NCBI RefSeq assembly: GCF_001194135.2 | Contig: NC_068989.1 | Location: 13,396,972 to 13,460,971, forward strand | Length of the DNA: 64,000 nt | Reading direction: 5' to 3' | Source: Octopus bimaculoides | Lineage: Eukaryota | Shown here: positions 9,646 to 10,683 of the stretch, piece after piece | Layout: every line of letters starts with the position of its first letter | Numbering within the stretch: position 1 is the first letter of the stretch | The notes under the pieces: model-generated | What the model saw: only the letters and a program-made list of their open reading frames with translations | Told to the model about the DNA's origin: nothing | Databases searched by the model: none | Position numbers and translations under genes: made by a program

Positions 9646-10143
9646 TTGAACTCTTACAACCTTTACAGCTTACTTGTGAGGACAGTAATTGTTGGACACC
9701 CTGCAGGACGAATAAAAAGACCCGTCATAGGACGAAAGAACTACTGTGTAGTCAACGGCCATTTCAACAAGTACCTTGTCTTCGGGGAGGTGTCTCTGTG
9801 GTCCTTTGACCCTGAGATGTATGCTAGACGGAGAGAAATCTTCAGACTGGTCTTACCAGGCCAGACAGGTGGAAGGGTAGGAGACAGACAAGACCTTAAC
9901 GACAATAAATCGAAGCGTCGGCAGTAGGGCGTGGATTTAATTATCGGCAGGACCTAACAAGATCAGATTCCTGCCTTTGAACTACCAGGATGTCGTGCAG
10001 AGGAACTTGCATAGAAGACAATAGATGAGACCCTAATTTTCTTAATTAGAATGAAACTGCAGGACCGCATGGAGCAGCGCGCTGTGACTCCTATAATATG
10101 CGCAACCGCAGACAGACAGACAGACAGACACAGACAGACAGAC

Positions 10144-10192
<49 letters not shown>

Positions 10193-10317
10193 TTAAAAGT
10201 TCGTTTCGGGATATTTTGTTTAAAACCCTAGCTGACCAAGCCTCTTTCATACCGTCTGTACTAGAGAGGTTATGTGCATCCGGCCATCCAGTATTAAGGG
10301 TCACCGATACCATTTAG
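9646..10317 (+). pseudogene. Decayed ORF of unknown family (~195 codons), interrupted by a GACA/GATA microsatellite
   Basis: One frame runs 9646-10110 with only three stops (TAG, TAA, TAG) and resumes in the same frame at 10192-10317. It is GC-richer than its flanks. Confidence 0.5.
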
Positions 10318-10484
10318 AACTTTATAGGTGCGAAACCAACGGTCACCCTCTGACTGGCTCTAATCAACAACCTTTTTTAAGTATAAATAAATATATATAT
10401 ATTTTTCAAAATGTAACCACATGTGAATCGTTGGCGATTTTTTTCCTCCGTCTTCCTTTTCTATTGGACTTTCCAATGTCTCCT

Positions 10485-10520
10485 GTTTCTGAAGAAGAGC
10501 TTTGCTCGAAACATATAAAT
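10485..10520 (+). ncRNA. Degenerate type I hammerhead ribozyme motif (second family)
   Basis: GTTT CTGAAGA A GAGC TTT GCTC GAAAC ATATAAAT: intact core and stem II, damaged cleavage triplet and stem I. Confidence 0.6.
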
Positions 10521-10608
10521 CACCTTTCTCTCCTTCCCTGCTAATACTTTACATGTACCACGTCCTCGCGTTTTTTTTTGTGTTTGTTCTTCGTTTTTTT
10601 AATTTACT

Positions 10609-10683
<75 letters not shown>

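What the first reader, a model, noticed from the sequence alone, without database searches (positions are those of the whole stretch)
9646..10620. Unidentified ~195-codon ORF directly upstream of a hammerhead motif: possible cargo gene of a ribozyme-bounded retroelement
Seen: one frame reads NSYNLYSLLVRTVIVGHPAGRIKRPVIGRKNYCVVNGHFNKYLVFGEVSLWSFDPEMYARRREIFRLVLPGQTGGRVGDRQDLNDNKSKRRQ*GVDLIIGRT*QDQIPAFELPGCRAEELA*KTIDETLIFLIRMKLQDRMEQRAVTPIICATA, then an 81 nt GACA/GATA tract, then IKSSFRDILFKTLADQASFIPSVLERLCASGHPVLRVTDTI*. All three internal stops are one substitution from CAG/CAA. About 170 nt later come CTGAAGA-GAGC/GCTC-GAAAC, a pyrimidine-rich tail and (GATA)n. I see no RT or GIY-YIG motif. 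Known: hammerhead-bounded PLE relatives (Terminons) carry accessory ORFs. Inference: a multi-copy element ending in a non-canonical ORF.
Basis: partly seen in the sequence, partly recalled or inferred. Interest (0 to 1): 0.7.

Follow-up and report, generated by a model that had tools for sequence, protein, structure and literature searches.

The report
Chance ORF beside decayed hammerhead repeat
The "ORF" is most likely a chance open frame in non-coding DNA of a microsatellite-rich animal genome, while the hammerhead-like motif after it probably belongs to a separate, dead 200-base Penelope-type retroelement fragment, which is an ordinary kind of genomic fossil.

Summary

**The ORF (9646-10317).**
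- It is open for 93 codons.
- Its length and stop count are matched by 15-22% of shuffles.
- It has no Pfam, PDB or real protein-database homologue, and no confident fold.
- It has no second copy in the window.

**The motif (10489-10512).**
- Rfam hammerhead models do not score it.
- It does sit in a ~200-nt repeat (10407-10608) with a second copy at 24321-24530 and a 5'-truncated third copy at 43666-43738.
- All three share a 3' end and lie inside (TA)n-type microsatellites.
- Copy 2 fits the published Penelope-element "min-HHR" in every tested feature except A6→U: 5-bp helix I, an unpaired base after A9, the G10.1-C11.1 pair, GAAA, palindromic ACGU, and U17.

**Verdict.** This is probably a decayed Penelope-derived hammerhead unit next to unrelated non-coding DNA. 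The repeat starts at a TA-rich tract about 65 nt after the ORF ends, and the ORF region is not shared with copy 2. No RT or GIY-YIG domain was found in the window's + strand. It is a new member of a known kind and of low interest.

The parts
9646..9927 (+). Judged a chance open frame in non-coding DNA.
   Evidence: Translation confirmed. Length not beyond chance. No Pfam match. No relatives among 5.8 G clusters. Only repeat-summation artefact hits among 1.84 G representatives. AlphaFold mean pLDDT 38.
9928..10109 (+). Non-coding.
10110..10192 (.). (GACA)n(GATA)n microsatellite.
   Evidence: Tandem Repeats Finder. Frame reading.
10193..10317 (+). Non-coding, with no homologue.
10382..10406 (.). 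TA-rich microsatellite-like tract that borders the repeat unit on its 5' side. Inferred to be the insertion target.
   Evidence: Copies 2 and 3 have an equivalent (TA)n flank.
10407..10608 (+). Copy 1 of a ~200-nt interspersed repeat. Inferred to be a Penelope-type 3'-end/pLTR-like or non-autonomous unit that carries the hammerhead relic.
   Evidence: Similar to 24321-24530.
10485..10520 (+). Degenerate min-hammerhead. Components: helix I 5' strand GUUU 10485-10488; core CUGAAGA 10489-10495; unpaired A 10496; helix II GAGC/UUU/GCUC 10497-10507; GAAA 10508-10511; damaged helix III and cleavage site CAUAU 10512-10516 (copy 2 has CGUU here); helix I 3' strand AAAU 10517-10520.
   Evidence: No Rfam hammerhead match. 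Folding z-score -0.61.
10609..10683 (.). (GATA)19 microsatellite that borders copy 1 on its 3' side.
24321..24530 (+). Copy 2 of the repeat, lying between (AT)n tracts.
24398..24434 (+). Near-complete min-hammerhead of copy 2: UCUUU-CUGUUGA-A-GAGC-GUA-GCUC-GAAA-CGU-U-AAAGA. All tested architectural features are present, but core A6 is U.
   Evidence: It is the only site in the window that fits my min-HHR descriptor at 1 core mismatch or fewer. 0.017 such sites are expected per shuffled window. Sequence read.
43666..43738 (+). Copy 3: only the 3' 75 nt of the repeat (5'-truncated, no hammerhead). It lies inside the (TA)n tract of a SINE.

Best explanation
Two unrelated things lie side by side.

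**1. The 'ORF' (9646-10381).** This is non-coding DNA of unknown origin, either unique or low-copy. It sits in a microsatellite-saturated animal genome, probably an octopod judging from my memory of its SINEs. One frame happens to be fairly open.

**2. The repeat (10407-10608).** This is a dead copy of a ~200-nt retroelement unit derived from a Penelope-like element. It may be the 3' end or pseudo-LTR of a heavily 5'-truncated copy, or a short non-autonomous derivative.

**How the live element probably worked (inferred).**
- It was transcribed on the + strand.
- It carried a minimal type-I hammerhead about 100-125 nt from its 3' end.
- That ribozyme has no helix III hairpin of its own. It would act only when two copies pair through the palindromic ACGU and cut after U17, trimming multimeric element RNA.
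- RT and GIY-YIG endonuclease came from an autonomous Penelope-like element. They copied the RNA into (TA)n microsatellites, often incompletely, which gives copies with a common 3' end and ragged 5' ends.

**State of the copy at this locus.** The ribozyme is broken. ACGUU has become ACAUAU, consistent with CpG decay plus a 1-nt insertion. Helix I is reduced to AAAU/GUUU, and there is no partner copy in tandem. No cleavage is expected here.

**Shown:** the repeat, its three copies, their flanks, the motif anatomy, and the lack of any coding signal.
**Inferred:** hammerhead ancestry, Penelope dependence, and the mechanism.
For: **The ORF is not a gene**
- It has 7 in-frame stops, counting those in the microsatellite.
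- Open-frame length has P=0.15 and stop count P=0.22 against shuffles.
- About 40 comparable open stretches occur in the window.
- No Pfam domain in any of the six frames of 7201-12180.
- No relatives in the word-index search.
- phmmer against 1.84 G representatives gave only three bacterial giant repeat proteins. Their best single-stretch score is 6.5 bits (independent E about 1e6), so these hits are a summation artefact.
- No PDB relative. Mean pLDDT 38.

**The ORF is unlinked to the motif**
- No second copy of 9643-10108 by blastn, nhmmer or tblastx.
- The copy 1/copy 2 alignment begins at the TA-rich tract 10382/24299.
- The upstream regions are dissimilar once the microsatellite is masked: score 11 against a shuffle mean of 12.2.

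**The motif lies in a repeat**
- The 27-nt block TTTCTGNNGAAGAGCNNNGCTCGAAAC occurs twice, against 0.00 expected.
- A profile of the repeat finds three copies.
- All three are flanked by (TA)n-type repeats, share a 3' end and have variable 5' ends.

**Hammerhead ancestry**
- Copy 2 is the only site in the window that fits the min-HHR descriptor at 1 mismatch or fewer, with 0.017 expected.
- Both copies have the unpaired base between A9 and G10.1 and the G10.1-C11.1 pair. Cervera & de la Pena list these, with palindromic 15.2-16.2, as hallmarks not imposed by their search (PMC4209133).
- The two copies are damaged at different places. A CUGAUGA ancestor is among the equally parsimonious reconstructions, needing one change in each copy.
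- Penelope-like elements carry hammerheads near their 3' ends in pLTRs and show (TA)n insertion bias. Cephalopods hold old Penelope-like remnants (PMC8557442). Penelope-like elements are a TE order in Octopus vulgaris (PMC13282606).
Against: - Only two motif-bearing copies are available, and each fails the descriptor at one point.
- Choosing the good feature from each copy risks cherry-picking.
- There is no covariation that counts: helix II is invariant.
- Rfam hammerhead models give no hit even on 66-71-nt search spaces at E up to 10.
- Helix II is 4 bp, whereas published Penelope min-HHRs have 6-8 bp.
- No RT or GIY-YIG domain was found on the + strand of the window in open stretches of 40 aa or more, so the Penelope link rests on architecture and literature.
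- The source genome could not be searched. Metagenome and viral collections gave nothing, so genome-wide copy number of the ORF region is unknown.
- The organism assignment rests on my memory of octopus SINE sequences.
Confidence: 0.6

Rival explanations
1. The conserved block is not hammerhead-derived. It would be part of an ordinary SINE/LINE 3' tail, with a short stem-loop recognised by some reverse transcriptase. Its likeness to CUGANGA...GAAA plus ACGU and helix I in one copy would then be coincidence.
For: - No Rfam hammerhead match at any threshold tried.
- Neither copy is a complete hammerhead.
- Core A6 is not conserved between the copies.
- There is no covariation.
- The core-only motif is expected 0.06 times per window, so it is not rare across a genome scan.
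- Copy 3 sits directly after a SINE head.
Against: - Copy 2 adds palindromic ACGU, a non-G residue at position 17 and a 5-bp helix I in exactly the right register. This is on top of the shared hairpin, bulge and GAAA.
- Such a site is expected 0.017 times per window at 1 core mismatch or fewer.
- The bulged base and the G10.1-C11.1 pair are family hallmarks (PMC4209133).
Confidence: 0.28
2. The ORF would be a decayed accessory (cargo) gene of a longer hammerhead-bearing Penelope/Terminon-like element. Copy 1 would be a long copy, and copies 2 and 3 would be 5'-truncated.
For: - The ORF frame and the motif are on the same strand, 172 nt apart.
- 5' truncation is real in this family (copy 3), so a longer copy is conceivable.
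- The frame has fewer stops than the other five frames.
Against: - Copies 1 and 2 both lose similarity at a TA-rich tract at the same position, which suggests a true element end.
- The ORF is not beyond chance.
- No homologue of any kind.
- No RT, EN or telomeric repeats.
- No second ribozyme bounds it.
Confidence: 0.04
3. The ORF region is a real lineage-specific small gene, an exon, or a recent pseudogene. It would be unrelated to the repeat.
For: - GC content is 46.6% against about 33% for the window.
- The frame is the most open of the six.
Against: - Stops at 9925, 9955 and 10012, plus four in the microsatellite.
- No homologue in 1.84 G representatives or Pfam.
- No gene product on record for it.
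- pLDDT 38.
Confidence: 0.05

Closest known systems
Minimal hammerhead ribozymes (min-HHR) of metazoan Penelope-like elements (Cervera & de la Pena 2014, PMC4209133)
   Same: - Type-I layout with a short helix I (4-5 bp).
- CUGANGA and GAAA boxes.
- One unpaired base between A9 and G10.1, and the G10.1-C11.1 pair.
- No loop 3, with palindromic 15.2-16.2 (ACGU in copy 2).
- Mostly solitary genomic copies, attributed to truncated elements.
   Different: - Helix II is only 4 bp, against 6-8 bp in the described families.
- Each copy here carries an inactivating change: A6U in copy 2, and loss of the 16.2/16.1 register in copy 1.
- No RT-EN ORF or pLTR pair is nearby.
- Activity is untested.
Penelope-like elements with (TA)n insertion bias (Naiad, and Neptune by hypothesis; Craig et al. 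2021, PMC8557442)
   Same: - All three copies lie inside (TA)n-type microsatellites.
- Common 3' end with 5' truncation.
- Hammerhead or 'HHR_core' near the 3' end.
- Cephalopods are reported to hold only old remnants, which fits the roughly 30% divergence between copies.
   Different: - No Penelope-like protein domain was detected in the window.
- Naiads are reported to lack canonical hammerheads.
- The clade cannot be assigned from 200 nt.
Animal non-LTR retrozymes (tandem hammerhead-bearing non-autonomous repeats related to Penelope pLTRs; bioRxiv 10.64898/2026.07.22.740005)
   Same: A short (~200 nt) non-coding unit with one type-I hammerhead, and probable dependence on Penelope-like enzymes.
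   Different: The copies here are dispersed and solitary, not in tandem. Tandem arrays are what define retrozymes and allow dimeric cleavage and circular RNA.
Terminons / Athena EN-minus Penelope-like elements of bdelloid rotifers
   Same: Only the general idea of a hammerhead next to a retroelement end.
   Different: There are no reverse-complement telomeric repeats, no Athena RT and no recognisable accessory ORFs. The setting is interstitial and microsatellite-embedded, in a different phylum.

Membership tests
Hammerhead ribozyme, Penelope-type min-HHR | Core box C3-U4-G5-A6-N7-G8-A9 | tested here: inconclusive
   Copy 1 has CUGAAGA, which fits. Copy 2 has CUGUUGA, with A6 changed to U.
Hammerhead ribozyme, Penelope-type min-HHR | Core box G12-A13-A14 followed by A15.1 | tested here: met
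   GAAA is present at 10508-10511 and 24422-24425.
Hammerhead ribozyme, Penelope-type min-HHR | Helix II closed by G10.1-C11.1, with one unpaired base between A9 and G10.1 | tested here: met
   Both copies read A + GAGC/NNN/GCUC. Helix II is 4 bp, shorter than the 6-8 bp of the described Penelope families (PMC4209133).
Hammerhead ribozyme, Penelope-type min-HHR | U16.1-H17 cleavage site with palindromic 15.2-16.2 (dimeric helix III) | tested here: inconclusive
   Copy 2 has ACGU + U and meets the feature. Copy 1, the finding, has ACAUAU and does not.
Hammerhead ribozyme, Penelope-type min-HHR | Helix I of 4 bp or more, in register with the cleavage site | tested here: inconclusive
   Copy 2 has 5 bp (UCUUU/AAAGA). 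Copy 1 has 4 bp (GUUU/AAAU) but no valid 16.1.
Hammerhead ribozyme, Penelope-type min-HHR | Match to curated covariance models (Rfam hammerhead families) | tested here: not met
   There is no hammerhead hit at the gathering threshold on the whole window. There is also none at E up to 10 on 2 kb or on 66-71-nt stretches. I did not test whether these models can detect hammerheads that lack loop 3.
Hammerhead ribozyme, Penelope-type min-HHR | Compensatory changes across family members | tested here: inconclusive
   Only two sequences are available. Helix II is invariant. Helix I position 1.4/2.4 is G-C in copy 2 and U-G in copy 1.
Hammerhead ribozyme, Penelope-type min-HHR | Self-cleavage (as a dimer) | not testable with these tools
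   This needs in vitro transcription. No tandem partner is present at the locus.
Penelope-like element | ORF with a telomerase-like RT and a GIY-YIG endonuclease | tested here: not met
   No Pfam domain was found in six frames of 7201-12180. None was found in + strand open stretches of 40 aa or more across 1-62.3 kb. The minus strand outside 7.2-12.2 kb was not scanned.
Penelope-like element | Pseudo-LTRs (partial tandem or inverted copies) flanking the body | tested here: not met
   No direct or inverted repeat of the unit lies around 9.6-11.4 kb.
Penelope-like element | Hammerhead near the 3' end, a common 3' end with 5' truncation, and microsatellite ((TA)n) targets | tested here: met
   Three copies share a 3' end and have ragged 5' ends. 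All lie in (TA)n-type tracts. The literature basis is PMC8557442.
Terminon (Athena-based giant element) | Reverse-complement telomeric repeat stretches next to the hammerhead, an EN-minus Athena RT, and several accessory ORFs | tested here: not met
   No CCCTAA repeats were found, although I assumed the host telomere unit. No RT was found. The ORF has no homologue.
Non-LTR retrozyme | Head-to-tail tandem array of hammerhead-bearing units | tested here: not met
   The copies are solitary and lie 13.9 and 19 kb apart.
Protein-coding gene (the 'cargo ORF') | An open frame longer than chance, or homologues, or a confident fold | tested here: not met

The most novel reading that the evidence does not exclude
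Elsewhere in the source genome, longer copies might join the 9646-10381 region to the hammerhead unit. The family consensus would then restore an open frame that encodes a protein with no known relatives. That would be a Penelope-derived, (TA)n-targeting element carrying a non-RT cargo gene. A milder version is that the 200-nt unit is an undescribed cephalopod family of solitary, non-autonomous Penelope-dependent elements with an unusually short (4-bp helix II) minimal hammerhead.
Probability: 0.04. Interest if true: 0.6.

Novelty: new member of a known kind. Interest (0 to 1): 0.14.

Why it matters
It matters little. Thousands of solitary minimal hammerheads left by truncated Penelope-like elements are already documented in metazoan genomes, and this would add a decayed family in a probable cephalopod.

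Two points are useful for the scan itself:
- A CUGANGA...GAAA hit that Rfam misses can still be a real relic. Comparing sister copies within the window exposed this one.
- Open frames of about 100 codons in this kind of DNA are at chance level.

Tried and rejected
- **First hammerhead verdict, withdrawn.** I first dismissed the hammerhead outright. Rfam gave no hit, I read A10.1·C11.1 as a mismatch, and I found no helix I or III. After reading PMC4209133 I withdrew that verdict, because the extra A is the family's conserved bulge and loop 3 is not required.
- **First organism guess, replaced.** I first took the genome for a penaeid shrimp because of its microsatellite load. The SINE sequences look octopod to me from memory, which I could not verify. 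A search for the Logan run accession found no paper.
- **Apparent protein hit, rejected.** The phmmer hit at E=4.7e-16 to a 3153-aa protein is about 20 stretches of 6.5 bits or less, each matching a bacterial Ig-like repeat.
- **External copy-number searches, all empty.**
  - Peptide-pattern scans of viral and metagenome contigs found nothing.
  - Exact 24-mer scans of both collections found nothing.
  - Exact-product look-ups found nothing.
  - A control with a SINE that is multi-copy in the window found only one distant Logan hit. These collections therefore barely cover the host, and the negatives say little about copy number.
- **Transposon structure.** No terminal inverted repeats or LTR-like repeats lie around the locus, and there are no tRNA genes.
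- **A second core match.** CTGATGA...GAAAC at 46248 has only a 3-bp helix II with no bulge, and the only AC...GU helix III pairing I found puts G at position 17. I treat it as chance.
- **Apparent upstream similarity.** The similarity between the regions upstream of copies 1 and 2 (P=0.005) is microsatellite against microsatellite, and it vanishes when that tract is masked.

Full report
**Setting.** The window is a draft eukaryotic scaffold of about 33% G+C. It is saturated with microsatellites and interrupted by 17 runs of N. It has no tRNA genes and no Rfam family at gathering score. Two SINE-like repeats recur many times. From memory their sequences match the abundant octopus SINEs, so the host is probably an octopod. 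I could not verify this with the tools.

**Checking the observation.**
- The frame starts at TTG 9646 and is open for 93 codons to TAG 9925. It then has TAA at 9955 and TAG at 10012.
- It next enters the (GACA)n(GATA)n tract at 10110-10192.
- It continues in the same frame for 41 codons to TAG 10315.
The '195-codon ORF' therefore has seven internal stops.
- The remark that each stop is one substitution from CAG or CAA is true of any TAG or TAA.
- CTGAAGA-A-GAGC-TTT-GCTC-GAAAC lies at 10489-10512. A pyrimidine-rich stretch and (GATA)19 at 10609-10683 follow.

**Is the ORF more than chance?** It is not.
- For the non-repetitive block 9643-10108 (46.6% G+C), 14.6% of dinucleotide-preserving shuffles contain an open stretch of at least 94 codons. 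In 21.7% of them some frame has 3 or fewer stops.
- The window holds about 40 non-repetitive open stretches of that length or longer.
- Pfam finds nothing in the frame or in any of the six frames of 7201-12180.
- The word-index search of 5.8 billion clusters finds nothing.
- phmmer against 1.84 billion representatives returns three bacterial proteins of 1,600-3,150 aa built from Ig-like repeats. Recomputing shows about 20 stretches per protein. The best scores 6.5 bits with an independent E-value near 1e6. This is a summation artefact on '...Y..R.I..LVLP..TGG', not homology.
- There is no PDB relative.
- A single-sequence AlphaFold model has mean pLDDT 38. This is weak evidence, but it is consistent with the rest.
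- No gene product with this sequence is on record.

**Is the motif a hammerhead?** My first answer was no.
- Rfam gives no hammerhead hit on the whole window, on 2 kb at E up to 10, or on 66-71-nt stretches.
- The region folds no better than shuffles, with z = -0.61.
- An exhaustive look for helices I and III around the core found no complete type-I or type-III arrangement in copy 1.

Two later findings changed the picture.

*A second copy exists.* A sensitive self-comparison showed that the motif is part of a repeat. TTTCTGNNGAAGAGCNNNGCTCGAAAC occurs at 10486 and again at 24400, against 0.00 expected.

*The published architecture fits.* Cervera & de la Pena (PMC4209133) describe the minimal hammerheads of metazoan Penelope-like elements as follows:
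- type I;
- helix I of 4-5 bp;
- one unpaired base between A9 and G10.1;
- a conserved G10.1-C11.1 pair;
- no loop 3, but a palindromic 15.2-16.2, so that two copies pair to form helix III.

The 'extra' A that I had read as a mismatch is that bulge.

*Descriptor test.* I wrote the architecture as a descriptor allowing one core mismatch. The window has exactly one hit, which is copy 2: UCUUU-CUGUUGA-A-GAGC-GUA-GCUC-GAAA-CGU-U-AAAGA at 24398-24434. Shuffled windows give 0.017 sites. Its only defect is U in place of the essential A6.

*Copy 1, the finding.* It keeps CUGAAGA, but it reads ACAUAU where copy 2 has ACGUU. A CpG-to-CpA change plus one inserted base would account for this. Its helix I is AAAU/GUUU.

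*Reading the two copies together.* The copies are damaged at different places, and a CUGAUGA ancestor would need one change in each. I read this as two decayed descendants of a working min-HHR. The caveat is that two sequences give no usable covariation, and picking the good half of each copy is a weak form of inference.

**The repeat unit.**
- A profile built from the copies finds three members: 10407-10608, 24321-24530, and 43666-43738.
- The third member has only the last 75 nt. It sits inside the (TA)n tract of a SINE.
- All three share the 3' end (...AATTCTCCC, or AATTTACT in copy 1).
- All three abut (TA)n-type microsatellites on both sides, with (ATAG)n on the 3' side of copy 1.
- A common 3' end with ragged 5' ends is the mark of target-primed reverse transcription.
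- A (TA)n insertion bias and a hammerhead near the 3' end within the pseudo-LTR are reported for Penelope-like elements. Cephalopods are said to hold old remnants of them (PMC8557442). Penelope-like elements are a recognised TE order in Octopus vulgaris (PMC13282606).

**Is the ORF linked to the repeat?** The evidence says it is not.
- Similarity between copies 1 and 2 begins at the TA-rich tract at 10382/24299.
- With the microsatellite masked, the 736 nt upstream of copy 1 and the 750 nt upstream of copy 2 align no better than shuffles, at score 11 against a mean of 12.2.
- The ORF block has no other copy in the window by blastn, nhmmer or tblastx.
- No second hammerhead bounds it.
- No RT or GIY-YIG domain was found on the + strand in open stretches of 40 aa or more over 1-62.3 kb.
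- There are no telomeric repeats of the kind that accompany Terminon hammerheads.

**Limits.**
- The host genome could not be searched.
- Scans of viral and metagenome contigs were empty.
- A control with a SINE that is multi-copy in the window retrieved a single distant Logan contig. These collections therefore barely cover the host, and the genome-wide copy number of the ORF block remains unknown.
- The minus strand outside 7.2-12.2 kb was not scanned for protein domains.

**Verdict.** The ORF is best explained as a chance open frame in non-coding DNA (about 0.9). The motif certainly belongs to a ~200-nt repeat. That repeat is probably (about 0.6) a dead Penelope-type unit carrying a decayed minimal hammerhead. 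The two are neighbours, not parts of one element. This is a new member of a well-known kind of genomic fossil, and of low interest.

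Noticed in passing
window ~2200-2344(-), 5013-5175(-), 14103-14320, 20257-20442, 40038-40191, 43490-43660, 61241-61442: At least seven copies of a tRNA-derived SINE-like repeat (...CCACATGGTT...AGTCCCACTGCGTGGC..., ending ...CCGTCGT and followed by (TA)n/(TG)n). From memory it matches the abundant octopus SINE, which suggests an octopod source genome. 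A Logan contig (L001, SRR11869394) holds a copy about 70% identical.
   Followed up: partly
window ~4185-4433, 5500-5734, 36610-36782, 39554-39802, 42651-42896: A second interspersed repeat family, whose translation reads '...GELAETLARRAKCLAVFRLPL...'. It is present in both orientations and accounts for several of the long 'inverted repeats'.
   Followed up: no
window 457-759, 17795-18638, 20460-21430, 25575-26103 and 13 other N runs: There are seventeen assembly gaps, mostly inside microsatellites. The longest 'inverted repeats' and many long 'ORFs' reported by the mechanical tools are runs of N matched to runs of N.
   Followed up: yes
window 10236-10541 (+): A 102-codon open stretch in a different frame runs across the hammerhead relic. 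It is exceeded in 3.9% of shuffles and has no relatives in the 5.8 G word-index search, so I treat it as chance.
   Followed up: yes
window 46248-46269 (+): A second CTGATGA...GAAAC core match. It has a 3-bp helix II with no bulge. The only AC...GU helix III pairing I found puts G at position 17, and helix I is at most 3 bp. I judged it a chance match.
   Followed up: yes
window 52943-53675 and 18981-19466, 46514-46780: Long trinucleotide-repeat arrays. One is a G/C-skewed array that reads poly-Ser/Gly, poly-Thr or poly-Val depending on the frame. The others are (ATT/ATC)n arrays. They give spurious ORFs of 140-220 codons on both strands.
   Followed up: no
proteins P0001-P0003: A method caveat. 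phmmer full-sequence E-values as low as 4.7e-16 arose purely from summing about 20 sub-threshold matches to tandem Ig-like repeats in giant bacterial proteins. The best single domain scored 6.5 bits.
   Followed up: yes
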